Below are positions 4,947-62,119 of a DNA stretch of 64,000 nucleotides, piece after piece. The first letter of the stretch is position 1. Each line of letters opens with the position of its first letter. Source of the stretch: Fimbriosthenelais zetlandica (lineage: Eukaryota). Below the pieces are notes generated by a model, which saw only the letters and a list, made by a program, of their open reading frames with translations, had not been told where the DNA came from and ran no database searches. The stretch lies in the NCBI GenBank assembly GCA_977030845.1, contig OZ365118.1, positions 15,376,001-15,440,000 of the forward strand, in the 5' to 3' direction. A program made the translations under genes and the position numbers.

Positions 4947-4952
4947 ACTCAC
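4947..4952 (-). other. 5' splice donor GTGAGT ending the protocadherin exon
   Basis: Plus strand reads actcac|ctg, i.e. minus strand CAG|GTGAGT, a consensus donor. The translated sequence beyond it loses recognisable features. Confidence 0.8.
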
Positions 4953-20742: not shown

Positions 20743-21422
20743 GGTGAAACTTAGAGTCATAATTATGTATAATGTACTTGTATATTATGCCGTGTGTGAA
20801 TTATGTCATTTTCGACTTGTATCTGTGATATTGTCCGTTAGACGGTCTGAATGTCTGAGAACACCTCAGCCATTCATGTAGGACTCCGTATGGGTCCCGC
20901 CTCTCACCAACACAAGGGGGCCTTCACAGGAGTGTTGGTCCGGGACTAGCCACGACCGGTTAGTCTGAGTCTGCTGCTTCAATCGTTCTCGGCCAGTTGG
21001 CCTCGAGTCCGGATCTTTGCAAGATCCTCGAATGAACCATGCTGGGTTCACGGGCCTAAGTGGAGACGTGTAGTCTTCCCGGGTATGCTACCCGCCTCGC
21101 ATTCCCACGCAACTACACCAGACCTGGGTCTGGTACCGAGCAAGTCCGTGTAGGACAAACTACCCGGGGCATCTTCCAAGGCCGGTTCCCGGCCGGGATT
21201 GCTATCCCGGATCTTCCACGTTTACGGGTCATTTACGGAGCGCTCGTCAAATCCGGAACTCCGGATTCCGGTTTGACTGTGCTCAGGGTTTGGCTGGGTA
21301 CCCATCCAGTTGACCTTGTGAGCGCCTGTAGCTTCCCTTATTGTACGATCACACGCGTTCTGGGTGCGCATTCATCACTGTCTATTGAATACCTGTTTGT
21401 TCTCCTGTATGGATCTACACTA

Positions 21423-21428
21423 AATAAA
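21423..21428 (+). terminator. LTR polyadenylation signal AATAAA (3' copy at 31116-31121)
   Basis: AATAAA followed by GT/T-rich sequence, ~120 nt from the LTR end in both copies. Confidence 0.7.
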
Positions 21429-21547
21429 TGAGCAACACTGCATAAGTTTTAAACTGTATCTGATTGCCTTTTGGTTCCTTCAATTATTGCCGAATTGTAT
21501 TTGGGTATTAGTTTTTAGTCTCTTTACTTTAGCCGGTTCATTACAAT

Positions 21548-21565
21548 TGGTGCCGTGACCAGGAT
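21548..21565 (+). other. Primer-binding site complementary to tRNA-His 3' end
   Basis: TGGTGCCGTGACCAGGAT starts two bases after the LTR end. It is complementary to ...ATCCTGGTCACGGCACCA, the invertebrate tRNA-His(GUG) 3' end as recalled. Confidence 0.85.
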
Positions 21566-21709
21566 ACCTTCTGTGCAGAAGGAGAAGCAGATGGTATCGT
21601 GAGAAAACTACGTGAACGAACAGTGGTATAGACTGTCCAAATACCTTGGTATTCGTGGAAGGGCGATTTCCGGATTGTTCCGGATAGTTTGTCGTGTAGA
21701 CAAAAGAAG

Positions 21710-23833
21710 ATGGAGGAAGACGCGGACCATGGCGTTGAGGCCGAAGTGGTCCTTAGTGAAAATGCAAGACGCGCGCTGCGCCGCGCTAGTAATCGAGCAG
21801 CAGATGAAGTCGGCATAGCCAAGGCACGATACGTTGCTCGAAAGCAAGAAATACTAGAAGCGGTGCAAGGTCATACGCCTCGGCATCCTCCCTCTGGAGG
21901 AAGGGCCGCCCCGGGTCATTTCCGGGATGACACAGACGTGTTCCTTGCGGAAGTTGAGCAGTTCGAAGAAAGCCTGGAGGCTGAACAAATAAGATACGGA
22001 GAAGAAGAAGACGACTCGGACGGGGAAGGGAGGTCGCACTACAGCATAGCGGATGATGAGGCTGCTTCCTTTGATGGGAGGATAGCCCCCGACCAGACCC
22101 CGGTGGGTGGCGATCTAGTGACCGTCCGCCCGCGAAGGTTGGAAGGTACGCTCCGCGAAGTGCCCCCCGGTTCCGGATGGGACGACCGAAGAGTGGTGTC
22201 AAGTACCCGTACGGGTGAGTTGGGTGACGAAGATCAGACGGATTCCGAGGAACGTGATGCAGTTCCCCGGAGGTACCGCGAAGGTCCGGGGGTGCGGTTT
22301 GCACCCAGTCCTGCGGCTGCGGGACCCCGAAGAATCGATCACCCAACTCCTGTCGTCCACGGGGAGGTGAGTCCTGTGGGCTCGCCATACCCGCGGCGGG
22401 AAAGACGCCCCAGTGGTCCCATACGTCCGGCAGCAACTCCGAGAAGGGATATCCCGGATCCGAGACCCGATGGTCACGTTCCGGGAATATGCCCGGAAGA
22501 GAGAAGAGCCTCTGCGCAGGCGCGAGATAGGCCGTTTACGAGTCCGGTGGTAATGGCCCCGGATTTGGCCCCGCGGTTGCTGACGGAGGATGCTATCTCC
22601 CGAAGTCCTTCGGAAGTTCCATCTCCAGGCATGTCCGGCGGACATGTAACCCCTTCTGTCTACACCACGGGCGTATCTCGGGAAGAAGTTGTATCGCCCC
22701 CGGCAGCCCCGGGATCGGTCTGTCGAACGGCGGGGATATCGGCGTTCGATTTGGACTTATCTCCGGAGCGGCCGCGGGGGAAAGGTAAATCGGCTTTGGA
22801 TTTGTCTCCCTGCGAAACGGGAGAGCAGGAACGAAGAGAAAGAGAAAGACAAGACCAGCCCCGGGGCCCGCGGGCTCTCCGGGAGTTACGGAGGGCAGGT
22901 GCAAATTCCGCAGGTGCGGAACGAGGATTGCCCCCGCGGCCACCCCCTTTTCCTGTGTGGGACGAATCCAAAGAGACGTGGGAAGATTACGAGTTGCGGA
23001 TTAATAGCTACTTAGCCAGGGGCACCCTGAGCGATGCAGAATTGAAAGACTACTTGACCGGCGGTCTGGGACGCCATCCCCAGATCGTCGCGGCTTTGGA
23101 CTTTTCCAAACCAGTAGAAGAGTTGTTGGAGTTATGTCGAACTTACTTCAGCGACCTGACGGAGCTGGATTTGCGCTTGCAGTTAGAAGCCTGTCGGCAG
23201 ACGAAAGACCAGTCCGTGAAACAGTTTGGGAGGGAATTTGCTGCTAAGGTGGATCGTGTCCACCGTCCCATGGATGAGAAGACTCGGGACCAAATGATCC
23301 ATCAGTTCACGATGGGTCTCCTTGACCGGAAGGTCGCGGATTATGTCCGCATGGCGGAACCGAGATCTATCTGGTCGGCTGTAACCTTGGCTTGTAAGGC
23401 GGAGGCATCGCGGAAAGCTTGGCAGTATAGGCAGGCTAAGGCGGCTGCGTACGCTCTTGCCCTGGAAACTGCCGAGCCATGGGACAATATGGGCGACTAC
23501 GGCGAAGAGGCGGGAGCAACGTTGGCGGCTGTTGACGTGGCGAAACGACCTCGACCGGACCGTCCTAAACCTAAGACATCTGGCGGACACGATAAATCGG
23601 CTGCCGCGCCCCGTCCGGCCGGACGCGGGCGTGGAGGTGCAAAGTCCAAACGCCGGACACCAGGGTGCTGGTGTTGTGGGGATCCCGGGCATTTCATGGC
23701 GGATTGCCCATCCCGGACCTCCATACCAAAAGAGATGATCGCTATGTTGCGAGAACAGATGGCAGGGGTTTTCCAGGAGGCTAGGGGAGAGAAGCCGGAA
23801 AACGCCCCGGGCTCCCTAACAGAAGCGGTTTAG
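21710..23833 (+). CDS. gag: Gag polyprotein, 707 aa: long acidic/Pro-Arg-rich N-terminal extension, capsid domain, CCHC zinc knuckle
   Basis: First ATG at 21710 in strong context (aagATGG); the track start 21689 is a TTG. MHR-like RQTKDQSVKQFGREF; CWCCGDPGHFMADC (Cx2Cx4Hx4C) at 23666-23707; TAG at 23831-23833. Confidence 0.92.
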   Translation: MEEDADHGVEAEVVLSENARRALRRASNRAADEVGIAKARYVARKQEILEAVQGHTPRHPPSGGRAAPGHFRDDTDVFLAEVEQFEESLEAEQIRYGEEEDDSDGEGRSHYSIADDEAASFDGRIAPDQTPVGGDLVTVRPRRLEGTLREVPPGSGWDDRRVVSSTRTGELGDEDQTDSEERDAVPRRYREGPGVRFAPSPAAAGPRRIDHPTPVVHGEVSPVGSPYPRRERRPSGPIRPAATPRRDIPDPRPDGHVPGICPEERRASAQARDRPFTSPVVMAPDLAPRLLTEDAISRSPSEVPSPGMSGGHVTPSVYTTGVSREEVVSPPAAPGSVCRTAGISAFDLDLSPERPRGKGKSALDLSPCETGEQERRERERQDQPRGPRALRELRRAGANSAGAERGLPPRPPPFPVWDESKETWEDYELRINSYLARGTLSDAELKDYLTGGLGRHPQIVAALDFSKPVEELLELCRTYFSDLTELDLRLQLEACRQTKDQSVKQFGREFAAKVDRVHRPMDEKTRDQMIHQFTMGLLDRKVADYVRMAEPRSIWSAVTLACKAEASRKAWQYRQAKAAAYALALETAEPWDNMGDYGEEAGATLAAVDVAKRPRPDRPKPKTSGGHDKSAAAPRPAGRGRGGAKSKRRTPGCWCCGDPGHFMADCPSRTSIPKEMIAMLREQMAGVFQEARGEKPENAPGSLTEAV

Positions 23834-26800
23834 GAGAGCCGGAGCCGGGCCGGGGGTTGGCGGGATTACCCGTAAACCCGGGCCCGGGAACGCTTCAACA
23901 ACCATCGGCAGCACGAAGTAACTCGGCGTCGGTAGTAGGGACTTCCGCGGAGGCGCGGGCGCCCGCTCAAGTTCAGAAGACCTCTGTACGGCCGCGGGCG
24001 GAGCCCGAAGTTGTGTCTATCACGGACGGTGGTACCCGGAACGCGCCCGCGAGGCGTCATGAACCTCGCGTGGGGAATGAAGTGATCACTGGAGAGGCGC
24101 CCCGACTGGTTTCCGTAACGTCCGAGTACGGAGCGGAACCGGTGCGGATAGCGATAATAGACCCAACCGACGTAAGCCGACATACTTTACGACTCCCTAG
24201 CCAGAAGGCTATGGTGAAGGACCGATGGTATGTTACCGTAGAAGTTAACCAGCAGGGAGCAGAGTTGTTATTGGACACAGGGGCTACTACTTCGCTTGTG
24301 TCTAAAGAATTCTACGACTCCTTGCGCCGCCCACCCCCTGTGCAGCCAACGCACACGGAGGTTATGGTCGCGGATGGGGACACGCTGCGGACGGAAGGCA
24401 TTGGCTGCTTTCCTTTTCGGATCGGTGGACACGTATTTGTAATGCCATGTTTGGTGGTTTCCGGACTGATCGACGGAGAAGAGGGCATTCTGGGAGCTGA
24501 TTTTTATCACGTCCACCGATGCTGCTTGGACTGGTCGGGACGACTTACACTCGGGAATGGGGAGGTGACAGTGGCGTGTCATGCCCGGAGGGCTGCGGCG
24601 AAGGCCCGGCTTTCCGAGGACGTGACCCTGGGCGCCTACCGAGCTGTGCTTTGTAAGGTTACGATCCCGCGGGATAACCCGCGCGGGTTGTTGTACATCC
24701 CGGACCATGAGAATTTGGCGGAATTGACAGTGGGGAGCCTCAGCACGTATGTAGCCGGAGAAGATAAAGAACCCCGTGTCATTCTGTCTAACCCCACGCC
24801 ATTGCCGATCCGACTGCAGCGAGAGACGCCGGTCGGAGATCTTCACGTGGTGGAGGTTACGGATGAGGACTTGATGTGCCCGGATTTGGTAGTACCCCCC
24901 GCAGATGAATGTCCGCTGGAGAAGGCGGTCAAGGAATCGCACATCAAGAATATCGGTCAGAAAGAACGGGCACTGGCACTATTACGAGAGTATTCCGGGT
25001 GTTTCGCGATGCCCGGAGACGAGTTGGGACAGACCGATCGGGTGAAGCATCGGATTACCTTAAAGAATCCGGACCCGATTCGGCAGCCTTACAGACGGCT
25101 TCCGGTTTCCCGGAGGGAAATATGTGAGGCGGAAATACAGAAGATGTTGGACAAAGGAGTGATCGAACCCAGTGAGAGCTCGTGGAGTTCCCCCATTGTC
25201 ATGGTCAAGAAGAAGGACGGATCGATGCGGTTCTGCGTAGACTATAGACGGCTGAACCAGGCAACCCAGACGGACAGTTACCCCCTGCCGCGAATTGACG
25301 AAGCGCTTGATGCGTTAGGCGGGAACCAGTGGTTCTGCTCGTTGGACTTGGAAAGCGGTTACTGGCAGATAGCGATGGAAGAAGAAAGTAAAGATAAGAC
25401 TGCGTTCATCAGCAGTCTTGGGTTATTTCAGTTCAAAGTTATGAGCTTTGGCCTGTGTAACGCGCCTGCAACGTTCGAGAGAATGATGGAGACGATGTTG
25501 TCGGGCTTAAGATGGAAGAAGTGTCTCGTTTACATCGATGATGTGATCGTGTACGGAAAGACGTTTGGGGATCTTCTGGATAATCTCCGGGAAGTTCTCG
25601 AGCGGGTCAGAAGCTATGGATTGAAGTTGAAACCTAAAAAATGTAAAATGTTCCGCCGTCGGGTGGAATATCTAGGCCGGATAGTTTCCGGAGCCGGGAT
25701 TGAGCCGGATCCCGCAAAGATACGGGCAGTGCAGTATTGGCCTCGCCCGGAGACCACGAAGGAAGTGAGGAGCTTCCTCGGGTTCACATCATACTACCGA
25801 GAATTCGTCCCACAGTTTGCAACTGTGGCGGGTCCGCTCCAGGAGTCGGTGGTGCTGGCAATGAAGAAGAGTGGAGGTCGTGCCTCCCGAGTCGAATGGA
25901 CTCCGGAGTGCGAGGTGGCCTTCCGCGAATTGAAGAGTTTGCTGGTCCGGGCCCCGGTTTTGGGTTACGCGAATTCTACGGGGACGTTCATTCTCGACAC
26001 AGACGCAAGCAACATCGGCATGGCCGGCGTGTTGTCCCAGATGCAGGACGGCCATGAACGGGTGCTGTGTTATGCAAGTAATTCCTTAAGTGGAAGCCAA
26101 AGAAACTACTGCACGACGAAGAAAGAGCTTCTTGCGATAGTGACCTATCTGCGGAAGTTCCGCCACTACTTGTTGGGGTGTGAAGATTTCTTCGTTCGTA
26201 CCGACCACGCTTCGCTGAAGTGGTTGGTGAACTTTAAAGAACCTCAAGATTTGTTGGCACGATGGCTGACGACCATACAAGAATACGGGATTAGTTCGGG
26301 CTTAATCCGGCATCGGGCAGGCGCCAAACATCAGAACGCGGATGCCCTGTCGAGGTTGGTAAAGAAGAAATGCCCGCGCCCGGGTTGTCAGCAATGTCAG
26401 CAGGCAGTAGGACCACCAGTCGTAGCCTCCCTAGCTGTGCTAGAGGATGAGGGGCGTATGCCGGGGGCGCAGAAGAACGACCCGGACATTTCCCGGATCA
26501 TCCGGCTGAAGCAGTCGGGTGCGGATGTTCCTTCGCGTGAGAAGTTGCGCGGAGAATCCGCGGAATATCAGACCCTTGCGGGAATGTATGACGATCTGGA
26601 AGTTGGAGAGGACGGTATTCTGCGTGCTAAGTGGCACAGAAAGGCCACCGGTTATACAAGATGGAGGATAGTCGTTCCCTACGCGCTCCGTGAGGAGATC
26701 TTCCGGGCCCTTCACGGGTCCCGGATTTGCGGACATTTCGGGAACTTCAAGTCGGTGTGGAAAATCAAACTGCGGTTTTACTGGCCCGGATTGAAGAGGG

Positions 26801-28254
26801 ACGTGGAACGATGGGTGAAAGCATGCCCGGAGTGTGCTATGCGGAAGTCTCGTGCTGGTGGGGGTCTAGCCCCCTTGAAGAAAGAGATTCACGGCACATC
26901 CTTTTCGCGGATCTCGTTGGATATCATCGGTCCGTTTTCCACAACCCCGCGTGGGAAGACTTGTGTTCTTGTCATTACGGACTTCTTCACGAAGTGGGTT
27001 GAGGCTATCCCGCTGCCAGACCATAAGGCAGAGACCGTGGCGCACGCCCTATTCTACGAATGGATTCTGAAGTACGGCCCACCTGTTTCCTTGCAGACGG
27101 ACGGTGCTCCAGAGTTCCGGGGTCATCTACTCACCGAACTATGTGAATTAATGGGCATGGAAAAGTTGTTGACGTTGCCTTACCGGCCCGTAAGTAATGG
27201 CCAGGTGGAACGTTTTAACAGAGTGCTCGTAGAGCAGCTTTCCTGCATCATTAACTATGACCAGAACCATTGGGACTTGTTGGTGCCATGTATTGCGAGC
27301 GCGTACCGAGGTACGGTTCACGCCAGTACAATGGTTACTCCGAATAGTGCACTATTCGGCTCGGAAGTAATCACTCCGGCGGATCTCCTTTACGGGGTTT
27401 ACCCGGGAATGTTGGATTTTCCGTGTCGGACGGTGTACGTTGAAGAAGTGAAGAAGCAGTTACGGAATGGCCATCGGTTCATCCGTGAACAGCTCGGGAA
27501 GTCCGCCGTGCATCAGAAACGATACTTCGATGCCCGGTCTCGCCCGCGGGAATACCCGCCGGGGACGGTGGTGTACAAGTATGACAACGTAAGGGCCAAG
27601 CACAAATATGATAGAAAATGGGACGGCCCATTCGTGGTCGTTCGAAATTACGGAGGGACAACTTACGAACTTCGCTCCGAGAGCGGTCTCCTACGATGTC
27701 ATGTGGACTACTTGAAGCCAGCGTTCGGGAAGGACGGGGCCGTGCAGACTGTGAATCTGCATGCAGCGCCGGAATATAGAGCTCAACAAGCGAAGGGGGT
27801 TGAATATGTTACGACGGATTTGATGGGTCGAACTATTCGCGGGAAAGACGCGCCGGAGCCAGCGGAACCCCGTGAGAGGGTGGTTCGCCGGCGTGGAAGG
27901 AAGAAGCGGCGCTCTGTCCCCCCGCAGAGCAGGGCGAGAACGAAGCTCCGCCCGAATCCGGACCCGGATTTCGTGGTTCCCACATCTGTTACGGATGTCC
28001 GGAAACCCGCGAACCGTGTCACCAGGGCTACGACGGCCCGTAAAAAGGCCGTGGAACGAGATGTAGGAGGTACAGATGTGCCTCGCGTTGAAGTTGAGCC
28101 GCGGACGAGAGTCGCGGGAAAACGCAGCATCCGGGCCCCGGAGAGGTTTGGGAATCTCGCCCCGGAACGTGAGAAGGGAAGGAAGAAACGTGTGACGAAA
28201 ACGCCTATACGACCGTTGCACGGTAAATATAAACAAACACAACGAGAAGTCTAA
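23785..28254 (+). CDS. pol: Pol polyprotein (aspartic protease, RT, RNase H, DDE integrase with GPY/F motif), -1 frame relative to gag
   Basis: LLDTGA at ~24274; YIDD 25531-25542; DTDAS 25996-26010; HHCC (HGSRICGH...CPEC); catalytic D 26920, D 27100, E 27208 (D-x35-E); WDGPF. The frame opens after TAG at 23782-23784, overlaps the gag end and has no ATG before the protease region. No chromodomain is evident. Confidence 0.97.
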   Translation, partial: GREAGKRPGLPNRSGLGEPEPGRGLAGLPVNPGPGTLQQPSAARSNSASVVGTSAEARAPAQVQKTSVRPRAEPEVVSITDGGTRNAPARRHEPRVGNEVITGEAPRLVSVTSEYGAEPVRIAIIDPTDVSRHTLRLPSQKAMVKDRWYVTVEVNQQGAELLLDTGATTSLVSKEFYDSLRRPPPVQPTHTEVMVADGDTLRTEGIGCFPFRIGGHVFVMPCLVVSGLIDGEEGILGADFYHVHRCCLDWSGRLTLGNGEVTVACHARRAAAKARLSEDVTLGAYRAVLCKVTIPRDNPRGLLYIPDHENLAELTVGSLSTYVAGEDKEPRVILSNPTPLPIRLQRETPVGDLHVVEVTDEDLMCPDLVVPPADECPLEKAVKESHIKNIGQKERALALLREYSGCFAMPGDELGQTDRVKHRITLKNPDPIRQPYRRLPVSRREICEAEIQKMLDKGVIEPSESSWSSPIVMVKKKDGSMRFCVDYRRLNQATQTDSYPLPRIDEALDALGGNQWFCSLDLESGYWQIAMEEESKDKTAFISSLGLFQFKVMSFGLCNAPATFERMMETMLSGLRWKKCLVYIDDVIVYGKTFGDLLDNLREVLERVRSYGLKLKPKKCKMFRRRVEYLGRIVSGAGIEPDPAKIRAVQYWPRPETTKEVRSFLGFTSYYREFVPQFATVAGPLQESVVLAMKKSGGRASRVEWTPECEVAFRELKSLLVRAPVLGYANSTGTFILDTDASNIGMAGVLSQMQDGHERVLCYASNSLSGSQRNYCTTKKELLAIVTYLRKFRHYLLGCEDFFVRTDHASLKWLVNFKEPQDLLARWLTTIQEYGISSGLIRHRAGAKHQNADALSRLVKKKCPRPGCQQCQQAVGPPVVASLAVLEDEGRMPGAQKNDPDISRIIRLKQSGADVPSREKLRGESAEYQTLAGMYDDLEVGEDGILRAKWHRKATGYTRWRIVVPYALREEIFRALHGSRICGHFGNFKSVWKIKLRFYWPGLKRDVERWVKACPECAMRKSRAGGGLAPLKKEIHGTSFSRISLDIIGPFSTTPRGKTCVLVITDFFTKWVEAIPLPDHKAETVAHALFYEWILKYGPPVSLQTDGAPEFRGHLLTELCELMGMEKLLTLPYRPVSNGQVERFNRVLVEQLSCIINYDQNHWDLLVPCIASAYRGTVHASTMVTPNSALFGSEVITPADLLYGVYPGMLDFPCRTVYVEEVKKQLRNGHRFIREQLGKSAVHQKRYFDARSRPREYPPGTVVYKYDNVRAKHKYDRKWDGPFVVVRNYGGTTYELRSESGLLRCHVDYLKPAFGKDGAVQTVNLHAAPEYRAQQAKGVEYVTTDLMGRTIRGKDAPEPAEPRERVVRRRGRKKRRSVPPQSRARTKLRPNPDPDFVVPTSVTDVRKPANRVTRATTARKKAVERDVGGTDVPRVEVEPRTRVAGKRSIRAPERFGNLAPEREKGRKKRVTKTPIRPLHGKYKQTQREV
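23797..23840 (+). promoter_or_regulatory. Predicted -1 programmed ribosomal frameshift signal (G_GAA_AAC + stem-loop)
   Basis: Heptamer 23797-23803 is in gag phase inside the 49-nt gag/pol overlap, followed by a 6-nt spacer and a 10-bp stem with one bulge (GGCTC-CCTAA / TTAGG-A-GAGCC, 23810-23840). Confidence 0.65.
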
Positions 28255-28590
28255 CCCTCGGACTCCCAGTAGTCTTAAGTGCGGGTCCGGGAGTTGGCTT
28301 TATCCCAGTGGATTCCGTGCAGGCTACATCCCGTGTAGGGGTATTTTCCGAGTCAAGTCGGTGGTGACACGTCGTGAAGACGATAGCCCGTGGATACCGC
28401 GGGTAATCAGTCCCTAAGCCGGGTTTTCGAAGAAGGAAGTTCCCTCCACGTTGTTCCGGAATATGAGCGAGGTGCTGTGCTGTATTCCGTCACCTTTGCG
28501 GGAAAAGAGTCCTGCCGGCCGGGGAGTGCTAGGATCGCTGGTTCGGGTTCTGGCCGTGTCTCCGGGGACGTTCCGAGGCGCTCGGGAGGC

Positions 28591-28776
28591 TGACGTCAGT
28601 CTCTGACCTAGATTAGGCTCCTTCGCTTCCTCTGGCCTCGACCTACATTCCATCTCATCAATATTCATGGCGCATGAATCACGTGAAAAGTAGTCCCTGC
28701 AGAAGCAAGACGGGGATTGGATGAATGAAGTCACGTGCCCGAAAGTAGATCGGCTTGCGCCATCAGCCCTATAAGA
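28591..28776 (+). promoter_or_regulatory. Candidate internal promoter upstream of ORF3
   Basis: TGACGTCA 28591-28598, TCACGTGA 28679-28686, ATTGG 28716-28720, GTCACGTG 28730-28737, TATAAGA 28770-28776. Confidence 0.5.
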
Positions 28777-29092
28777 GGGCCTGCATCCCCAGTCTCGTTC
28801 CCCTTTGTCATCAGTGGTTCCTCGGATGGAGGAACCTGGGCTACGCTGAAGGCGGGAAGAGTTCCCGCGCTCGCGCAGCGTAAACAAGTCACGAGGTTGG
28901 CTTGGTCATCTAAGACTCCGCTGCTAGATTGCATCTAGTAAGAGCAAATCTCGACACAACTTACCCCCACTACAGCAGTAGAAGAGAGTAACTTGAATTC
29001 TCGTCGTTCTGTGATATCGTGGAAGGAAGGAAGTTTGCGAAGTTCCTGATTGTGACATCTCACACGTTACGGATTCTTCTCCGGATTCCGTC

Positions 29093-30661
29093 ATGGCTGA
29101 ACGCCATAGTGAACCCCGTTCCTTTGAACCACCACAGGGCGTCGGTGACTATAGGTCCCATAGAAGTAAGTCTAGGGATTCCTCTCATTCCTCACGATCC
29201 TCCGGATCGCGAAAGAAGGATGATAAGTCTCGGAGGAAGTACGAAAGGCGTGCAAGGTCTCGCTCGCTCTCGCCTCCGGGCAAAGATGGAGAAGTTGCCA
29301 GATTCTCCCCGCTTAAGGCCGTGAGGACGCCTGGAATACGTCGTCTTCGCTACGAGGATGTGGGACATCTGCGGCCTAAGGACTTCATCGAGGTTGTGCC
29401 CCGAACGGCGCGCCCCGCGAACAGTGATCCCCGTGAAACTGATCCGGATTTAGACGCGTTCATAGAGGGAATGACTTACGAAGGTCTCTTCCACGAGATC
29501 CAAGCAACCACAGGTCCCACGTTCCGTGGGCTCGCCCTCCCTACCGTGGAAGTGTCTCATCTAGAGCGTCTCCAGCGGGTCGAAAAGATTTGGGCCCCTC
29601 CGGAAAGGTGCCCTTTCCTCATTTGCCGGTCTAGGACCCAGAGTAAGGGCATCATGTGTGTTCTGCGCAACCGTGAATGGTTCTACCGACATCTGGTTGA
29701 GATACACACTCCTGTTACCGTGGTATGGTATTGTCCGATTCGGCAGTGCCTACACCGCACCGATCGTCCGGATGAGATGCAGGACCATATTTCGTCCGGA
29801 CACAAACAAAGTAAGAAGGATGCTTTGTCCAGGGTTAGAAGAGACGGCAGGTGGGAGTATGTGATAAATCCCTATTTCGCCAGCACTCTCTGGATGGATG
29901 ACGCGGACTACTTCGGCTATTTGAAGTCGCGATCATATCCCGACCACCGTCAACCCGGATCGCCTCCAGAACAGCCGGCCAAACGCCGTCATGAAGACAG
30001 GTCTCCGGAATCCATCCGGGCAATCCCCGCTGCTGCGGGAGCACCTCCTGCCATTGTGGCTACTGCCCCTGAGGAAGTCCCCTCTACTTCCGTGGCGCCT
30101 ACCCCTGAGGGAGTCCCCTCTACTTCAGTTGGACATCTGGAAGACGTGACGAATGACAGTCAGTTAGCGGAACCTCCCGCCGAGTCGAGTGTTCGATCCC
30201 CGGAAGTGCCGGGCACCTCCTCTATGGCTGGTTCCCCCTCCGCTTGTTCAGTCAGTGGGACTGATGATGATGAAAGTATGGACGGTTACATAACGGATTC
30301 GGTGAATTCGATCGCGGCAACCGCGCGCGAGGTCTTACGATCTCAGGTCCGTGCTTGCCGTGAACAATCGCGTCGTGAGGACGCTGGAGCCATCTCCCGA
30401 TTACACGCGGAGAATGTTCAACTCCGGAAAGACTATGAGCAAGCGCTCATTCAACTGAGGGAGGTCACCCGTTCCCGGGAAACGCTTCGGCAGCAAGCCG
30501 CCGGATTCGAGGAAATAATGAAAGTAGCCCGTAGAGTGGATGTCCCTACTAAACCAGCCACTCGAATGGGCCCGGACTCCGTATGGGTCCCGCCTCTCAC
30601 CAACACAAGGGGGCCTTCACAGGAGTGTTGGTCCGGGACTAGCCACGACCGGTTAGTCTGA
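29093..30661 (+). CDS. ORF3, 522 aa accessory protein of unknown function (RS-rich region, two C2H2 zinc fingers, NLS-like motif, Pro/Ser/acidic linker, coiled coil); not an envelope protein
   Basis: Uninterrupted ORF with good Kozak context (gtcATGG). C-x4-C-x21-H-x4-H at 29609-29707 and C-x4-C-x12-H-x4-H at 29732-29803; PAKRRH ~29975-29992; 36-nt tandem duplication (30066-30090 / 30102-30126); heptad-like region ~30320-30530. No signal peptide or TM segment. The last ~29 codons lie within the 3' LTR. Confidence 0.85.
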   Translation: MAERHSEPRSFEPPQGVGDYRSHRSKSRDSSHSSRSSGSRKKDDKSRRKYERRARSRSLSPPGKDGEVARFSPLKAVRTPGIRRLRYEDVGHLRPKDFIEVVPRTARPANSDPRETDPDLDAFIEGMTYEGLFHEIQATTGPTFRGLALPTVEVSHLERLQRVEKIWAPPERCPFLICRSRTQSKGIMCVLRNREWFYRHLVEIHTPVTVVWYCPIRQCLHRTDRPDEMQDHISSGHKQSKKDALSRVRRDGRWEYVINPYFASTLWMDDADYFGYLKSRSYPDHRQPGSPPEQPAKRRHEDRSPESIRAIPAAAGAPPAIVATAPEEVPSTSVAPTPEGVPSTSVGHLEDVTNDSQLAEPPAESSVRSPEVPGTSSMAGSPSACSVSGTDDDESMDGYITDSVNSIAATAREVLRSQVRACREQSRREDAGAISRLHAENVQLRKDYEQALIQLREVTRSRETLRQQAAGFEEIMKVARRVDVPTKPATRMGPDSVWVPPLTNTRGPSQECWSGTSHDRLV

Positions 30662-31238
30662 GTCTGCTGCTTCAATCGTTCTCGGCCAGTTGGCCTCGAG
30701 TCCGGATCTTTGCAAGATCCTCGAATGAACCATGCTGGGTTCACGGGCCTAAGTGGAGACGTGTAGTCTTCCCGGGTATGCTACCCGCCTCGCATTCCCA
30801 CGCAACTACACCAGACCTGGGTCTGGTACCGAGCAAGTCCGTGTAGGACAAACTACCCGGGGCATCTTCCAAGGCCGGTTCCCGGCCGGGATTGCTATCC
30901 CGGATCTTCCACGTTTACGGGTCATTTACGGAGCGCTCGTCAAATCCGGAACTCCGGATTCCGGTTTGACTGTGCTCAGGGTTTGGCTGGGTACCCATCC
31001 AGTTGACCTTGTGAGCGCCTGTAGCTTCCCTTATTGTACGATCACACGCGTTCTGGGTGCGCATTCATCACTGTCTATTGAATACCTGTTTGTTCTCCTG
31101 TATGGATCTACACTAAATAAATGAGCAACACTGCATAAGTTTTAAACTGTATCTGATTGCCTTTTGGTTCCTTCAATTATTGCCGAATTGTATTTGGGTA
31201 TTAGTTTTTAGTCTCTTTACTTTAGCCGGTTCATTACA
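30574..31238 (+). repeat. 3' LTR, 5'-truncated (665 nt)
   Basis: No mismatch found against 20881-21545 (offset 9693). Ends TTACA|ATAT. It does not begin with TG and has no upstream polypurine tract. Confidence 0.92.
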
Positions 31239-34081
31239 ATATATTCACATGAAATTGTGTAGAAATGAAAATGACTTGAGTGCATAAAAAAATCCACCAG
31301 ACGGCAGACACTTTGAACTAAATTAAAGACTTCACAAGCATCATTATTTCAATAATGAAGACGAAGCAGCACCCAATATTAGACGAATCTCTCAATTAAA
31401 ATCGCTTGAATCTTTAAGAAAGGTTGAGGTCCAAATTTTCAAATTTAAGAATTTTCATTTCCAACTCACTTTTAATTCCCTCTGAGTAGATGACAGACAG
31501 ATGGACTGATCAAAATTTCTCCAAAAAACTCCAAATTGAATTTCCCAAGATTGGCTTAAGTTTATGAGAATGGATTTTCCCAATTATTTGTTAAGCATGA
31601 CGTCACGTCTTGTGAACGAAAGAGGAAATAGGGGAATAGGCTTTGTCCCTTTTAATAATAAAGGGACCATTTTAAGTGATCAACGGCCGTTTCTTATCGC
31701 TGTTTGATTTGGGCAAAGGTTAAGAAAGCCTCTATTGTGAGAGGTTTGTCTAAAGATAGCCCTTACCCTCGATGGTGGTACTCAAGAGGGCTTGTCTCAC
31801 AATTAGGATGTACTTCTTTATAAGTCCCCATGGACTTACCATTGGTTCTAGCTTTGTAGTGAAACACGCCCAAAATGTAAGACCCTCCAAGGGTGGGGGG
31901 CTGAAGGACATAGCTATACATTTGTTGCATTGTTCGTCAGTGTCTCAAGTCTATTGTTGGCGACAGTTAATAGCTACTATTATATACTCCAAACTGTCGA
32001 CATCTTAATTGGGCAGGGGAAAGATGAATAACATTTCAATTAATTGTACAGATAAGATTTTAAGTGAATTAAGAATGATCCTGCTTCAGAAGCAAGGTAC
32101 CGATAATATAGCTAGGTCTAAATAAACAAGTTTATATATCACTAATGTATAATTGTAAAGTTCTACGATACAGCTGTGAGATTGCAATGGTTTATCACCT
32201 ATAAAATCATTTAGAAACTTAAAGCCATTTTTGGTCAAATCACCAAGCCAATAATAACCCCTGATGAGGCCCATTCCGTCGCGAAAATAAACAGCCTTAT
32301 ATAAGCTTATAGATTTCTGGAAGATGCATAGAACTGTAGATTCATCCTTCGATGGAACCCAATACCCAGTCAAGCTTATTATAAGCCCTCGCCTATATAC
32401 CAGTGCTAAAAAACCTCCAGTTTATCAGCTTCCCTGCGTCTCATAAATGCTTTAGCATAAAGCTTTAATAGACGACTGGAAGCAGTTGAGCCAGGACCAT
32501 GGACCACCCCGGCTAATGTGCCCCGATGTGCTCTTCCTTCCATAACCCTGCCTACCTATATACTCTATGTCAATAGCATTTTCATAGTCCCTCACAATGG
32601 TTGGGAAATAGCCTGCACCACTCCTCGGTGGCCACGATTCAAAGAAGGGGACCTGGATATTGGCGATAAAGCAGTCGCAAGGAAATTGCTATGTCTTTGC
32701 CTTTTATGTGGCCTCCGCCCCTCCCGACCGACGAAGCATCTTTTAATACGCTGCCATATAGACTAGGTAATAGTTACCTACAAGAAGGCAGGTGTAGTAA
32801 CATAGCTATACCTTATAAAAAAGACAAGCAAGAACTCTTAATTCCCTCCTTGAGCTTAATCACTTAAAATTCTATTATAGTACATTATAAATATAGATAA
32901 ATTGTCAAAGATATACCATTGTGTAGCTCCCCAAAGGACCAATACCTCACATGGTTATTTTTTCCCTTTAAAGCGGGGGTGGGTTAAAAATAGGTGGGAA
33001 CCATAATGCATTTATGTAAGAAGAAAGAAATGAATTGATTTCCCAGCGCATATGTTAGACGACGAGGGAGGGGGAGATGGAGAGATGGTTTGTTTCTATA
33101 ACAGGTATGGATTGGGGAAGGGTATAAGAAGCACTAATGCTATCATTCAAATGAATCGGCTGGCAGAGCTGGCATTTTACGCGGCAATGCTTTCACATAT
33201 GAGCCATAGTTGATAGCGTTTAAAGCAAACACACCCCACCAGTGATACATCATGGCGGCAGACAGCTTCCCTGCGTGCTGCATTTCAACAACATTAAGAG
33301 GCGGAAAACATTCAAGCTACTGCCTCTCCAAATTCCTATCCTTCCAAGTGAAAAGAAGGTGGTGGAGGAATGGAATAAGAAGAAGAACTGGTCGCCAGTG
33401 GCAACAGAACAATATTGTTCTAGTTATCATATCGCCGGAGCCAAAGGACAAAAATTCCTTAAGCTCGCATGACCAAAAGCTGTATTTCATTTGGCACCTT
33501 TTTTAGGATCCGTTAGCAGGTTGCTAAATCAGGGAGGCGAAGAGGAGATGGCGAAATTGCTCATTACGAGCTGAGACTAGGCAGGAATAATACTTCAAGG
33601 CCCTTTCTCATTGTTGAACATTACCCAGTGGGGGTGTAGGGGGGTCCAGGAACCCACTAGTACCCCCCTTTTCATGATTAATGATAGCACCATTGTCCTC
33701 TGCGTGATCACGACTTTCTCTATCAAGGTGGCAACTTCTTGAAGTCTGGCTTTACCCGAGGAAGAAGAATGCTTTACATGCGAAGAGAGGGAAATGCTTG
33801 TAAGCAATCCAATTAAATGTTTGTCTTTTGTAAGACTTGCTATCGTCTGTGGTGGTGTAATAAGCATCATTAAAGCTAGTAGGGAGGGGGTGATATGTTC
33901 TTCCTCCTTAAAGCAGTCTCCCTCGTTAAAGCCAGGGTTGTCATGAACGAGGATCAAGCCTTCTGCGGTCAGTGTGGGTGTGTGCGTGTGATTTTTAAGG
34001 TGCGAAGAAAAAGAAGGGGTGGGGTTAATTAACAAGGGAACTGGGCGAAGGAAGGGAGTGTGAGAAGGGGCTTCTGGGAGA

Positions 34082-34216
34082 NNNNNNNNNNNNNNNNNNN
34101 NNNNNNNNNNNNNNNNNNNNNNNNNNNNNNNNNNNNNNNNNNNNNNNNNNNNNNNNNNNNNNNNNNNNNNNNNNNNNNNNNNNNNNNNNNNNNNNNNNNN
34201 NNNNNNNNNNNNNNNN
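34082..34216. other. Assembly gap (135 N) in purine-rich low-complexity sequence
   Basis: Run of N flanked by GA-rich sequence. Confidence 1.
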
Positions 34217-37200
34217 GAGAGAAAGCGAGAGAGCCCAATAGAGGGAGAGAGGGTGTGAGTGAGGCAGGGGGAGAGGGGGCTGTCATGCAAAAGATGTCTC
34301 GGTGAAGAGTCATCAGCGATCATCCCTACTCGCAAACGAGCAAAAATCCCCAGTACCCCATCATCAAAAACCTAGCCCTTTTTATGAAACGCCTTCCTGA
34401 GGCGTTACGCAACACCTCTTTGTCTTTCATAGACATCCTGCATGTCAAGTAAATGGAACAAACAGGTTTATGATGTAGTCTTATGAAACAGATCTCAGAC
34501 CCATTTCATAATGGGTTATACAACGTATATATGCGTAAATGTTTCATAAGTGCCCTAAAGCTATTATTAACAGACACTGGGCTCATTTGGAATGCAACAT
34601 CTTTGCCTTTCCACCTCAACTTTCGTCCTCGGAGCTACTCTTGCAGCAGCCACCTTATAGTCTCGAGTTGCTTGGAGAAGCCCATGTCAACCATATAGAG
34701 TGGCTGCATGTATAAATGCGCCACGCCAGCTTAAAGACTACAACTCGTACATACACCACAACATATACCTATAAGCTGCCTACATTACTAAAAGCTTCCT
34801 CCATGGGATGAGGTGCCTAATGTGAATATATAGTTTCAGTTCCTCTCTGCCCACCTTCCACTTCCTCCTAGCTAGTCTATTAAGCACTAGATAGATCCTC
34901 ATCCCCGGCGAACCTTCAGGGAAAAGCATCCATTCACTCAGGAGAGCTTTTCCCTTTCCTCCAATAAAACTGCTGTTGCTGGTTTGTCTACTTGTAAATG
35001 GATTTCGCCTTAGCGTCTGGAAGAGTTTAAAAGAAGAAATGGACTTTTTTCGCTTTACATATGTTTCCTTAAAGATGCCTGCTTTGGCATTTAGGTCTGT
35101 ACGGTTTCTTCACAAAGGTGCCAAGAGGAATTTGCTGTTCCAAGGCCTAAGATAAGCTGCACAAACATTCGAAATGTGCAGAATCTAATGTGACATTTGC
35201 AGAATAAATCATTATTCGACATCCTATGTATAATATGAATAATATAAGCCTTTTCGAAAGTTTACTGCCTTATATATTATATAGCGCTTTTTTATGAAAT
35301 GGGATGTGGCGTAACTTTCTCATGGAACAGGCAGACAAGGGCTAACATATAGGCATAGCTCTTATTTTATATGGAATGTATTGAGAGGATTCACAGACAT
35401 ATGAAAAAGTGAATCCACATTCACTGAGGATGTAATGCAAGACAGTGCAGCATATTGTGGAATTCAATTTAGAACGCCAGCCAAACTTGCTGATGAATCA
35501 TCTTTTGAAATATGATAGAATCATAACCGTCAATACATCAAAGAGAAATCAAAACACATTCCCTCTCTGGCATCGTTATATCTGGCTGTCTCCTATTTCT
35601 CTCTACCTTCTCTTTCAATTACAATCTTCAGTTAGGATCCGATTCATATATAATACGTGCCATATTAGACAATATCAAATCTATGGGATAATCTAACATA
35701 GCACCCTATCCTTATGAAATGCCCCCCTCCCCTCAGATTTTCATTTTGAAGATTTTCTAGTCTACAGAGATAGCACCCAACAGAACTTTGCTAGATCGAT
35801 TCATTTAACCTAGTGCAACAGAGACTCGCTTCATTAAATAGTGAAGCAAATGCATTAGCACCCCTCTCAGCCCACCTCCCACTCAGTGCGCAAATGAAGT
35901 GTTTTATAAATCCATGCAGATAATCCCAGGTGCTATAAATACAGTTGCCAGGGACGCTCGGCTGTGGCTGCGGTGGAATTCTGGGCCGGAGGGGCTTACT
36001 AACAATGCATATGAAATGATTGCATGTCCGTCTACTCTACCTTGCATACACGATGTCTTGAGGTCGTGCCCTCTACTGTCCTTTCACCTTGAGTTGTGGG
36101 CGGTGAGCCTCAATGGGTCAAATCAAACTTGGCCTTGCAAAAGAGAAATTATATGGACACCGTCCCAACTCTGTGAATCGACGCGTCACTATAACTGGTC
36201 CAAGTCGTGTCACAAGTACAGCTATATGTGAACAAGGCCGATAACGGTTGCAAGACACGTCAGTCCAACTCACTAGAGTGTCCAAATTCATTCAGTCCAG
36301 TCCACTAGGGAGACGTGCCACGTCTTTGTCTCAGTTAAATAGATTTAACAGGAGCTCTTGTGCAAGCGACAAAAGGTAGCCGCGGCCCTCTCCAGCAAAG
36401 AAGCTCTGGCTATAGGTTTGGCTATAGGCTGGTTGGAGCATGTGTTGAAGTTGGGGGTTTTCAGCGGGGGTCTGGCGGTTTTGGGTCCATTCAGTAAAAT
36501 TGGACAATGTCATAATAACCAGTCATCTGTTGCATAAACGACATCCCCATTATTTTGTTAAAACATATGTTTTATACAAAACCCTCCAGTTCACAGACTT
36601 TTCATAAAATCCCTGGAGATTTGATATTTTTATGAAATGACTAACCATCCCTGATCCATCACCTATAAGGACATCCTCAGACAACCCCCCGTGTAGTCCC
36701 CACCTCCACTTTCACACCCCCATCTACCTTACTGTATACCGCGACTAAATTCCACCTCACAAAAGCCCCACTTCACGCTCCATGCAGTTTCGATCCAGCC
36801 TATTTTCTCATGATCCCAGATCCCCAACTTCATCTGATTCACCTCCCACAAAAAGACCAGATCATCGACTTAATCTCCTCACAATATCTCCCCTTTCATG
36901 ACCACTCGAGCCTTAAACACCAAGCTGAGACGAGCCCAACTCACGGGGCGGCTTTCCCCCTCTCCCTCTCCCACTCTCCCTCTCCCCTCTCCACTCTCCC
37001 CTCTCCACTCTCTCACTCTCCCCCAGGCGTTTACCAATTAAACACCAGAAGCAAAGAGAAAACTGACGAACGTTGACATACCCCCTATGTCGCCAGCCTT
37101 CATTATTGCAATCCGAGAAAAAATTCCTGCCCCGAGGGGGAAGGCCAATTATTATTTGCCCAAAGGACATGGCCCGACAGCTGAGTGTTGGATTTCTAAA

Positions 37201-61949: not shown

Positions 61950-62119
61950 CCACACAACAATACACAAACAATGGTGGAGGCCTCCAAACATAACCACACA
62001 ACAATACACAAACAATGGTGGAGGCCTCCAAACATAACCACACAACAATACACAAACAATGGTGGAGGCCTCCAAACATAACCACACAACAATACACAAA
62101 CAATGGTGGAGGCCTCCAA
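61950..62119. repeat. 44-bp minisatellite, ~3.9 identical copies
   Basis: Unit CCACACAACAATACACAAACAATGGTGGAGGCCTCCAAACATAA starts at 61950, 61994, 62038 and 62082 (partial). Confidence 0.95.

What the first reader, a model, noticed from the sequence alone, without database searches (positions are those of the whole stretch)
29093..30661. Gypsy retrotransposon carries an RS-domain / double C2H2 zinc-finger / coiled-coil protein in the env position
Seen: a 522-codon sense ORF between pol and the 3' LTR, with no signal peptide or TM segment, so it is not Env. It has an N-terminal Arg/Ser-rich block (RSHRSKSRDSSHSSRSS...RARSRSLSPP), two C-x4-C...H-x4-H fingers (one with canonical 12-residue spacing, one with a 21-residue spacer), PAKRRH, several SP sites and a C-terminal heptad-rich helix. 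Established: third ORFs of animal Ty3/Gypsy elements are typically env-like; RS domains typify splicing/RNA-processing factors; C2H2 fingers bind nucleic acids; complex retroviruses encode nuclear regulators (Tat, Rev, foamy virus Tas) and some transposons encode anti-silencing proteins. Inference: an element-encoded nuclear regulator (trans-activator, RNA export/splicing factor or silencing suppressor), which would make this a 'complex' retrotransposon. I do not recognise the protein, and I could not check whether it is already described.
Basis: partly seen in the sequence, partly recalled or inferred. Interest (0 to 1): 0.85.

Follow-up and report, generated by a model that had tools for sequence, protein, structure and literature searches.

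The report
Zinc-finger accessory gene of a Gypsy retrotransposon clade
A young, intact Ty3/Gypsy retrotransposon carries, where an envelope gene would sit, a non-membrane protein with two conserved zinc fingers; the same gene follows pol in every sufficiently sequenced relative of one clade, so it is a real, selected accessory gene whose function is still unknown.

Summary
[quoted passage not shown] The element has 100% identical 667-bp LTRs and unbroken gag, pol and ORF3. ORF3 has no membrane-type hydrophobic segment. It has an Arg/Ser-rich N-terminus, two Cys2-His2 units and a long predicted C-terminal helix.

New here:
- ORF3 is not an orphan. An exhaustive profile search found five remote homologues.
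- Contigs of related elements (pol 40-59% identical) show a homologous ORF 0.6-1.4 kb downstream of pol.
- In an RT-RNase H tree all carriers form one clade. Eight of 8 clade members with enough downstream DNA have the gene; no outgroup locus does.
- All eight Cys/His ligands are kept in 8 of 9 aligned members.
- Codon positions 1 and 2 are more conserved than position 3.

No Pfam, PDB or fold match is significant. The weak matches are all classical tandem C2H2 fingers (Zif268, CTCF, Tramtrack).

The best reading is a clade-specific, probably nuclear, nucleic-acid-binding regulator of the element. It resembles Cer1 CERV in position and logic but is unrelated in sequence. That function is inferred, not shown. 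The Arg/Ser tract is not conserved in position, so the link to splicing factors is weak.

The parts
20881..21547 (+). 5' LTR (667 bp)
   Evidence: Exact 667-nt match to 30574-31240. Ends read. The true end may be the CA at 21545.
21548..21564 (+). Putative primer-binding site (starts TGG directly after the LTR)
   Evidence: Read. Inference from the usual Ty3/Gypsy layout; not matched to a tRNA.
21710..23833 (+). gag, 707 aa from the first ATG, unbroken
   Evidence: Weak zf-CCHC (E 0.013) and Ty3_capsid (E 0.026) matches, both below Pfam cut-offs. 22-23% identical to the gag of L004.
23785..28254 (+). pol reading frame (PR-RT-RNaseH-IN), unbroken; -1 relative to gag and overlapping gag's last 49 nt
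   Evidence: 56% identical to the L001 pol, 59% to L004, 42-44% to L005 and L006.
28255..29092 (+). Non-coding spacer between pol and ORF3 (838 nt, six ATGs)
   Evidence: Not alignable with relatives' spacers. Fold z-score -1.3. One crude splice-acceptor-like site, no strong donor in the leader.
29093..30661 (+). ORF3, 522 aa, unbroken: the accessory gene
   Evidence: ATG in a G-3/G+4 context. Remote homologues E 4e-12 to 9e-5.
29153..29278 (+). Arg/Ser-rich low-complexity block (residues 21-62)
   Evidence: pLDDT about 32-51 by 10-residue block; AlphaFold2 puts a short helix at residues 43-56. Its position is not conserved in the family.
29405..29917 (+). Conserved family core (residues about 105-275): acidic stretch, two fingers, following beta-hairpin
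   Evidence: Alignments A1, A2, A4. Profile hits to new members E 1e-26 and 7e-19. Codon-position identity 0.44/0.46/0.31.
29609..29707 (+). Finger 1: C173-x4-C178-x21-H200-x4-H205
   Evidence: All four ligands present in 9 of 9 aligned members. Predicted beta-beta-alpha topology at low confidence.
29732..29803 (+). Finger 2: C214-x4-C219-x12-H232-x4-H237 (classical C2H2 spacing)
   Evidence: C219 is kept in 9 of 9 members and the other three ligands in 8 of 9; the exception is the broken copy L009. The family profile aligns in register with Zif268 finger 1, E about 0.01.
29918..30277 (+). Pro/Ser/Thr/Ala-rich linker (residues 276-395) with PAKRRH and SP sites
   Evidence: 52-60% P/S/T/A/G in the 40-residue blocks from residue 281 to 400. 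pLDDT below 50. Not conserved.
30278..30535 (+). Long predicted helix (residues 396-481) with heptad pattern
   Evidence: AlphaFold2 helix 396-481, 10-residue block means of pLDDT 67-90. Heptad score 1.00. A comparable segment is in L001, and plausibly in L007 and L008.
30574..31240 (+). 3' LTR; its first 88 nt encode the last 29 residues of ORF3

Best explanation
ORF3 is a lineage-specific accessory gene of one clade of Ty3/Gypsy retrotransposons. It encodes a soluble, mostly disordered protein built around a conserved pair of classical-type Cys2-His2 zinc fingers. Basic Ser-rich tracts flank the fingers, and several members, including this one, have a long helix suited to oligomerisation.

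The most likely mode of action is as follows. The protein is made from a subgenomic message. It enters the nucleus through its basic tracts. It binds the element's own nucleic acid (RNA or LTR DNA) through the finger pair and multimerises through the helix. In this way it regulates the element's expression, by RNA export or processing, or by transcription.

Shown: the gene, its conservation, its fixed position after pol, the ligand pattern, and the absence of membrane features.

Inferred: zinc binding, nucleic-acid binding, nuclear location, oligomerisation, and every step of the regulatory role.
For: - The ORF is intact in a very young copy: LTRs 100% identical, and CpG o/e 1.05 against 0.5 in the flanks.
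- Homologous ORFs lie 0.6-1.4 kb downstream of pol in L001, L005, L007, L008, L009, L010 and L012.
- All carriers form one clade in the RT-RNase H tree. Eight of 8 clade members with enough downstream DNA have the gene, and no outgroup locus does.
- Eight ligands are kept in 8 of 9 members.
- Identity by codon position is 0.44/0.46/0.31 in the core.
- The ORF3 core (26-35% identity) is at least as conserved as gag (22-23%) between the same lineages.
- All weak structural and profile matches are tandem C2H2 DNA- or RNA-binding fingers.
- By eye, the window's finger 2 shares with Zif268 finger 1 the residues at the positions that contact bases in that protein. The contact positions are from established knowledge.
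- No hydrophobic anchor is present.
- Six upstream ATGs in the spacer make translation from genomic RNA unlikely.
- Precedent: Cer1 CERV (PMC10309623).
Against: - No experimental or expression data of any kind are available.
- The structure models are of low confidence (mean pLDDT 47-49).
- No fold or profile match is significant (best Foldseek E 0.047; best PDB profile E 0.009).
- No Pfam C2H2 model matches the window's protein, even at E 5.
- The Arg/Ser tract and the helix are not conserved in position or presence across the family.
- No splice donor or internal promoter could be identified.
- The spacer shows no conserved sequence or unusual folding.
- A two-finger unit does not distinguish DNA from RNA binding, nor regulation from, for example, integration targeting.
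Confidence: 0.5

Rival explanations
1. ORF3 is a structural or chaperone component of the particle: a second nucleic-acid-binding protein that coats or packages the element's RNA in the cytoplasm. This would resemble LINE-1 ORF1p, which combines a disordered N-terminus, a coiled coil and an RNA-binding domain. In this reading it is not a nuclear regulator.
For: The architecture is a disordered basic region, a nucleic-acid-binding module and a long helix. Nothing here fixes the cellular compartment.
Against: The element already has a full-length gag with capsid-like and CCHC-like parts. The helix is missing from some intact members (L002, L003). The order here, fingers then helix, is the reverse of LINE-1 ORF1p (own knowledge).
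Confidence: 0.12
2. ORF3 is a sequence-specific DNA-binding factor that tethers the pre-integration complex to preferred chromosomal sites. It would be an integration-targeting adaptor, doing what chromodomains do in chromoviruses.
For: Finger 2 resembles a DNA-reading C2H2 finger in register, with matching contact-position residues. No chromodomain is found in pol.
Against: Only one insertion is available, next to nothing distinctive. No clean target-site duplication could be read; at best there is a 4-of-5 match. No target preference can be tested here.
Confidence: 0.1
3. ORF3 is a host gene fragment captured recently by this element and carried along without any function for the element.
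For: LTR retrotransposons do capture ORFs downstream of pol (review PMC6431247).
Against: The gene is present throughout a clade whose pol proteins are only 40-59% identical. The ligands are conserved and the codon-position pattern is that of coding constraint. An exhaustive search of 1.84 billion representative proteins gave only five hits; two lie in retroelement contigs and none is a named host gene. An ancient capture that was then kept remains possible, and that is compatible with the main explanation.
Confidence: 0.03
4. ORF3 is a degenerate or unconventional envelope or cell-to-cell transmission protein.
For: [quoted passage not shown] Some Env-less elements use other small membrane proteins (abstract of PMC11952523).
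Against: No signal peptide or TM-like segment occurs in any of nine members (maximum hydropathy 0.85-1.35). No Pfam envelope or fusion family matches. The composition is highly charged and disordered.
Confidence: 0.02

Closest known systems
CERV of Cer1 (Ty3/Gypsy, Caenorhabditis elegans), PMC10309623
   Same: An ORF in the env position of a Ty3/Gypsy element that is not Env and has no homologues outside its own lineage. A Cys-containing finger-like motif, a multimerisation region and proline-directed Ser sites. The protein is nuclear and is needed for export of unspliced genomic RNA. It is the best functional analogy.
   Different: The exhaustive search returned no Caenorhabditis protein, so no sequence relationship was found. 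CERV's motif is a short Cys loop, not a pair of C2H2 fingers. CERV is made by splicing gag-derived exons onto the env-position exon. ORF3 here has its own ATG in a good context, and no splice could be shown.
Classical tandem C2H2 zinc fingers (Zif268/EGR1, Tramtrack, CTCF, TFIIIA)
   Same: Finger 2 has C-x4-C-x12-H-x4-H spacing. The family profile aligns in register with Zif268 finger 1 (E about 0.01). The predicted topology is beta-beta-alpha for both fingers. All top Foldseek matches are tandem C2H2 proteins, including the two-finger Tramtrack domain.
   Different: No match is significant. Pfam zf-C2H2 does not match the window protein. Finger 1 has a 21-residue spacer, and finger 2 carries insertions of variable length in relatives. 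The inter-finger linker is 8 residues rather than the canonical 7.
Regulatory proteins of complex retroviruses (Rev/Rex-type RNA export factors, Tas/Tax-type trans-activators)
   Same: A small element-encoded non-structural protein downstream of pol that overlaps U3 of the 3' LTR. It has basic Arg-rich tracts and an oligomerisation helix. This is the same logic of an extra gene that needs its own message.
   Different: None came back as a hit in the PDB sequence or fold searches. Those proteins have no C2H2 fingers (own knowledge). The host element is a Metaviridae-type retrotransposon, not a retrovirus.
Extra ORFs downstream of pol in other LTR retrotransposons (plant Tat/Ogre/Retand lineages and others)
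   Same: The general phenomenon is described: ORFs in lieu of env whose function is mostly unknown (PMC6431247; introduction of PMC10309623; PMC11963269 listed).
   Different: No sequence relationship was found. Those are plant lineages. No published third ORF with paired C2H2 fingers was found in three literature searches.
RS-domain RNA-processing factors with zinc fingers (SR proteins such as SRSF7, ZRANB2, U2AF small subunit)
   Same: An Arg/Ser-rich tract combined with a zinc-binding module. This comparison rests on own knowledge and is a lead only.
   Different: No RRM or other Pfam domain is present. The tract is short (about 42 residues) and not conserved in position within the family. 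Those factors use different finger types (CCHC, RanBP2, CCCH).

Membership tests
Ty3/Gypsy (Metaviridae) LTR retrotransposon | Two long terminal repeats in direct orientation flanking the coding region | tested here: met
   667-bp LTRs, 100% identical, 9693 nt apart.
Ty3/Gypsy (Metaviridae) LTR retrotransposon | pol domain order protease - RT - RNase H - integrase | tested here: met
   Pfam Asp_protease_2 at 126-216, RVT_1 at 450-608, RT_RNaseH at 708-810, Integrase_H2C2 at 940-999 and rve at 1017-1111.
Ty3/Gypsy (Metaviridae) LTR retrotransposon | gag with capsid and CCHC nucleocapsid | tested here: inconclusive
   zf-CCHC E 0.013 and Ty3_capsid E 0.026, both below Pfam cut-offs. The gag proteins of relatives L004 and L006 match zf-CCHC with E-values of 3e-7 and 1e-3.
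Ty3/Gypsy (Metaviridae) LTR retrotransposon | Target-site duplication and TG...CA LTR termini | tested here: inconclusive
   The LTR starts GG. Only a 4-of-5 match of flanking pentamers is found, and only if the LTR ends at its CA.
Retroviral / errantiviral Env | Signal peptide and at least one transmembrane anchor | tested here: not met
   Maximum 19-residue hydropathy is 1.10 in the window and at most 1.35 in eight relatives.
Retroviral / errantiviral Env | Sequence or profile similarity to known envelope or fusion families | tested here: not met
   No Pfam family at E up to 0.1 for the whole ORF3 or up to 5 for its core. No PDB hit.
Classical C2H2 zinc finger (Pfam zf-C2H2) | C-x2-4-C-x12-H-x3-5-H ligand spacing | tested here: met
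   Met by finger 2, C214-x4-C219-x12-H232-x4-H237. Finger 1 has x21 instead of x12.
Classical C2H2 zinc finger (Pfam zf-C2H2) | Significant match to the family profile or to solved C2H2 structures | tested here: inconclusive
   Pfam: no match for the window, and one relative at E 0.57. PDB profile search E 0.009-0.047 to Zif268 finger 1, in register. Foldseek best E 0.047, on a low-confidence model.
Classical C2H2 zinc finger (Pfam zf-C2H2) | Ligands conserved among homologues | tested here: met
   Five ligand columns are kept in 9 of 9 members and three in 8 of 9. The exception is a broken copy.
Classical C2H2 zinc finger (Pfam zf-C2H2) | Zinc actually bound; beta-beta-alpha fold | not testable with these tools
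   Only a low-confidence prediction of the topology.
SR-protein / RS-domain splicing factor | RNA-recognition motif plus a C-terminal RS domain | tested here: not met
   No RRM or any other Pfam domain. The Arg/Ser tract is N-terminal, about 42 residues long, and sits elsewhere in relatives.
Cer1 CERV-like export factor | Sequence homology to CERV | tested here: inconclusive
   The exhaustive search gave five hits and no named Caenorhabditis protein. Whether CERV is in that library was not verified.
Cer1 CERV-like export factor | Encoded in the env position, non-Env, lineage-restricted | tested here: met
   Compared with PMC10309623.
Cer1 CERV-like export factor | Spliced message; nuclear protein; required for genomic RNA export | not testable with these tools
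   No transcript or localisation data are available. A crude splice scan was uninformative.

The most novel reading that the evidence does not exclude
This clade of Ty3/Gypsy elements, found so far in this genome and in metagenome and sequencing-run assemblies (some from Tara marine samples), would be a second, independent case after Cer1 of a 'complex' LTR retrotransposon. Its third gene would encode a sequence-specific, zinc-finger-based regulator that binds the element's own RNA or LTR DNA in the nucleus and controls its export, splicing or transcription. That would be a Rev/CERV/Tas-like function built from a classical C2H2 pair.
Probability: 0.3. Interest if true: 0.75.

Novelty: new variant of a known kind. 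Interest (0 to 1): 0.55.

Why it matters
Non-Env third genes of LTR retrotransposons are widespread but almost none has a known function. Cer1 CERV is the one worked-out animal case. Here a third gene is defined as a protein family, with at least 13 members so far. It has a recognisable nucleic-acid-binding module, fixed synteny, and a clear clade boundary.

That turns an orphan ORF into a testable candidate for an element-encoded regulator. It also gives a conserved domain (residues about 105-275) that could be modelled, annotated and searched for in animal genomes.

The copy in this window is unbroken and very young, so the family is probably still active in its host. This matters for annotating that genome, where the ORF could be mistaken for a host zinc-finger gene.

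Tried and rejected
- Word-index protein searches with ORF3 alone and with alignment A2 found nothing. Even known members were missed, probably because low-complexity words filled the candidate list. This says little about absence.
- Exact-sequence look-ups of ORF3 and of neighbouring ORFs: not on record.
- Pattern scans for the ORF3 core in JGI metagenomes and IMG/VR gave no confirmed relative. pol scans of IMG/VR also gave none.
- Pfam on ORF3 and on eight relatives: nothing significant.
- PDB by sequence: nothing for ORF3 alone.
- Foldseek against the PDB: nothing significant. The viral library was not tried because the model is poor.
- dN/dS: all available pairs are 42% identical or less, so synonymous sites are saturated. 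Identity by codon position was used instead.
- The pol-ORF3 spacer shows no conservation with relatives apart from one patch of about 67 nt shared by L008, L009 and L010. It shows no unusual RNA folding (z = -1.3).
- A crude splice scan found no strong donor in the leader and one acceptor-like site.
- The LTR and leader have no repeated short motif that could serve as a finger target.
- Rfam and tRNA scans of the window were empty.
- Host identification failed. A single-exon protocadherin and flank CpG o/e of about 0.5 do not fix the taxon.
- The idea that contig L002 is a spliced subgenomic RNA was considered. Its 5' end matches pol just after RNase H and the integrase region is absent. It was not adopted, because contigs L090 and L093 from the same project show no such junction.
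Full report
**Observation**

It runs from 29093 to 30661 on the + strand, ATG to TGA, 522 codons. The same frame is open from 29015, and the ATG has G at -3 and G at +4.

- An Arg/Ser-rich block lies at residues 21-62; 30 of the 40 densest residues are R/K/S.
- There are two Cys2-His2 units: C173-x4-C178-x21-H200-x4-H205 and C214-x4-C219-x12-H232-x4-H237. These are nt 29609-29803.
- PAKRRH is at residues 295-300, and there are six SP sites.
- The highest 19-residue hydropathy mean is 1.10, in a Pro/Ala-rich stretch, so there is no signal- or TM-like segment.

One correction is needed. The ORF does not end before the 3' LTR. Its last 88 nt (29 codons) lie inside it.

**The element**

Two 667-bp LTRs (20881-21547 and 30574-31240) are 100% identical. 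A TGG-initiated primer-binding-like site follows the 5' LTR directly.

- gag is 707 aa from its first ATG, at 21710-23833.
- The pol frame is -1 relative to gag, is open from 23785 and overlaps gag's last 49 nt. It runs to 28254 with PR-RT-RNaseH-IN in Ty3/Gypsy order.
- gag, pol and ORF3 have no breaks.
- CpG o/e is 1.05 in the element against 0.51-0.54 in the flanks. This is consistent with a very recent insertion.
- I could not read a clean target-site duplication. At best the flanking pentamers match 4 of 5, and only if the LTR ends at its CA.
- Between pol and ORF3 lie 838 non-coding nt with six ATGs. ORF3 therefore probably needs its own message.

**Relatives**

Word-index searches failed. 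An exhaustive phmmer search of 1.84 billion representative proteins gave five remote hits, P0121-P0125. Their E-values run from 4e-12 to 9e-5 at 27-38% identity, and all cover the finger region.

Genomic context:
- The contig of P0121 (L001) has a Ty3/Gypsy pol 56% identical to ours, and 730 nt later the 784-aa ORF3 homologue.
- Among contigs of other pol relatives, L005, L007, L008 and L009 each carry a large ORF after pol.
- A profile built without L007, L008 and L009 matches the L008 ORF at E 7.5e-15, a second reverse-strand copy in L008 at 3e-6, L009 at 2e-5 and L007 at 1e-3.
- A scan of metagenome contigs with a pol alignment returned 80 further Ty3/Gypsy loci. Only two of them, L010 and L012, contain the core, at E 1e-26 and 7e-19.

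Clade boundary:
- I built a neighbour-joining tree from single, uninterrupted RT-RNase H matches in 86 loci. All carriers fall in one clade, together with L004, L006 and L011.
- The contigs of those three end before the core could appear.
- So 8 of 8 clade members with enough downstream DNA have the gene.
- No outgroup locus has it, although many outgroup loci have 3-10 kb of downstream sequence and some carry other large ORFs.

State of the ORF across the family:

| State | Members |
|---|---|
| Complete and open (6) | window, L001, L002, L003, L007, L008 |
| Open but cut by a contig end (4) | L005, the second L008 copy, L010, L012 |
| Broken into three pieces (1) | L009 |
| Short variants (2) | P0123, P0125 |

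P0122, P0123 and P0125 come from the same sequencing project. Several relatives come from Tara marine metagenomes.

**Constraint**

In the nine-member core alignment, five ligand columns are kept in 9 of 9 members and the other three in 8 of 9. The exception is the broken copy.

Pairwise identity by codon position is 0.44/0.46/0.31 in the core and 0.35/0.40/0.28 in its flanks. This is the pattern of protein-level constraint with saturated third positions.

The core is 26-35% identical between lineages whose gag is 22-23% identical and whose pol is 42-59% identical. Classical dN/dS was not possible, because no pair exceeds 42% identity.

**What the protein looks like**

Domain and fold evidence:
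- No Pfam family matches ORF3 or its relatives.
- AlphaFold2 with the shallow family alignment gives low-confidence models (mean pLDDT 49 and 47). Both fingers are still drawn as hairpin plus helix. The model also shows a further hairpin at residues 245-258 and one long helix at 396-481, with 10-residue block means of pLDDT 67-90.
- About 357 of the 522 residues are below pLDDT 50, which suggests disorder.
- Foldseek finds nothing significant. All top matches are tandem C2H2 proteins: CTCF, WT1, TFIIIA and the two-finger Tramtrack domain.
- A profile of the family core hits Zif268/EGR1 finger 1 at E 0.009-0.047, in register for both Cys and the first His.
- Comparing the window's finger 2 with that chain as printed, five of the twelve residues between the second Cys and the first His are identical. 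These include the positions known to contact bases in Zif268 (established knowledge).

Other features:
- Arg/Lys/Ser-rich tracts occur in every member but at different places.
- A heptad-type helix downstream of the fingers is clear in the window and in L001. It is plausible in L007 and L008 and absent in L002 and L003.
- The overlap of ORF3 with the LTR is not shared by L009.

**Mechanism**

Shown:
- a conserved, clade-defining, non-membrane gene after pol;
- a conserved two-finger core.

Inferred:
- zinc and nucleic-acid binding, from the C2H2 pattern;
- nuclear entry, from the basic tracts;
- oligomerisation, from the helix;
- a regulatory role for the element.

I commit to a nuclear, nucleic-acid-binding regulator of the element's expression, with confidence about 0.5. 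I cannot choose between RNA export or processing and LTR-directed transcription.

Rivals are a packaging or chaperone protein (0.12), an integration-targeting adaptor (0.10), a passively carried host capture (0.03) and an unconventional Env (0.02).

**Comparison with what is known**

The closest functional precedent is CERV of Cer1. It is an env-position ORF, not Env, lineage-restricted, nuclear, carries a Cys motif and a multimerisation region, and is needed for export of genomic RNA (PMC10309623). No sequence relationship to it was found.

Extra ORFs after pol are a described phenomenon (PMC6431247). Three literature searches found no third ORF with paired C2H2 fingers. Repbase, Dfam and GyDB could not be consulted.

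I therefore rate this a new variant of a known kind. It is a new accessory-protein family in a known architectural slot.

- The host organism is unknown.
- The relatives are metagenome or run-assembly contigs of unknown origin.
- The tree is a quick distance tree without support values.
- My script outputs list stop-to-stop ORF bounds for the pieces of the broken ORF3 copy in L009. These bounds indirectly bracket its interruptions. I did not use them further and do not repeat them here.

Noticed in passing
window 4881-7784 (-): Single-exon protocadherin ORF of 967 aa. It has seven cadherin repeats, a Cadherin_2 N-terminus and a weak protocadherin cytoplasmic match. The best solved relatives are Pcdh10 and Pcdh-gammaB4 (about 368 bits), so it is a host gene 13 kb from the insertion.
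   Followed up: partly
window 20881-31240 against its flanks: The element has GC 0.56 and CpG o/e 1.05. The flanks have GC 0.42-0.45 and CpG o/e 0.51-0.54. The copy shows no CpG decay, which fits its identical LTRs.
   Followed up: partly
window 34082-34216: A run of 135 N, an assembly gap or masked stretch. A mechanical ORF (33595-34335, -) runs across it and should be ignored.
   Followed up: no
window 61950-62119: A perfect 44-bp tandem repeat, 3.9 copies at 100% identity. It is followed by degenerate 15- and 25-bp repeats up to 62631.
   Followed up: no
window 21154-21261 with 21649-21693: Three short stretches in the 5' LTR are complementary to three stretches in the leader just upstream of the gag ATG (12-14 nt, 85-93% complementary). 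This could be a long-range leader structure or chance.
   Followed up: no
window 21786-22436, 22199-22645, 23183-23692, 24268-24942, 27691-28242, 28414-28887 (-): Several antisense ORFs of about 150-220 codons lie inside gag, pol and the pol-ORF3 spacer. They are probably a by-product of the element's high GC content. None was tested.
   Followed up: no
L002 1-500 (Logan ERR14368245): The contig begins with about 33 codons matching pol just after RNase H. A stop follows, and the ORF3 homologue starts about 360 nt later, so the integrase region is absent. This may be an internally deleted copy, an assembly join or a processed RNA. Sister contigs L090 and L093 show no such junction.
   Followed up: partly
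L007 1-17182 (Tara metagenome scaffold): The whole element (gag, pol, 904-aa ORF3) is repeated head to tail with a period of 12183 nt. This is either a tandem array sharing an LTR or an assembly wrap-around of a multicopy element.
   Followed up: no
L008 12689-14641 (-): A second member of the ORF3 family lies on the opposite strand, next to the first element and cut by the contig end. Two elements of the clade therefore lie tail to tail.
   Followed up: no
L008, L009, L010 spacers (about 170-260 nt after pol): A patch of about 67 nt is conserved at 76% between L008 and L010, and partly in L009, in otherwise unalignable pol-ORF3 spacers. It is a candidate cis element of that sub-clade and is not found in the window.
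   Followed up: no
L029, L033, L034, L045, L048, L051 (outgroup Ty3/Gypsy loci): Other large ORFs of about 500-1100 codons follow pol in outgroup elements and do not match the finger core. These are other, uncharacterised third genes, or neighbouring elements.
   Followed up: no
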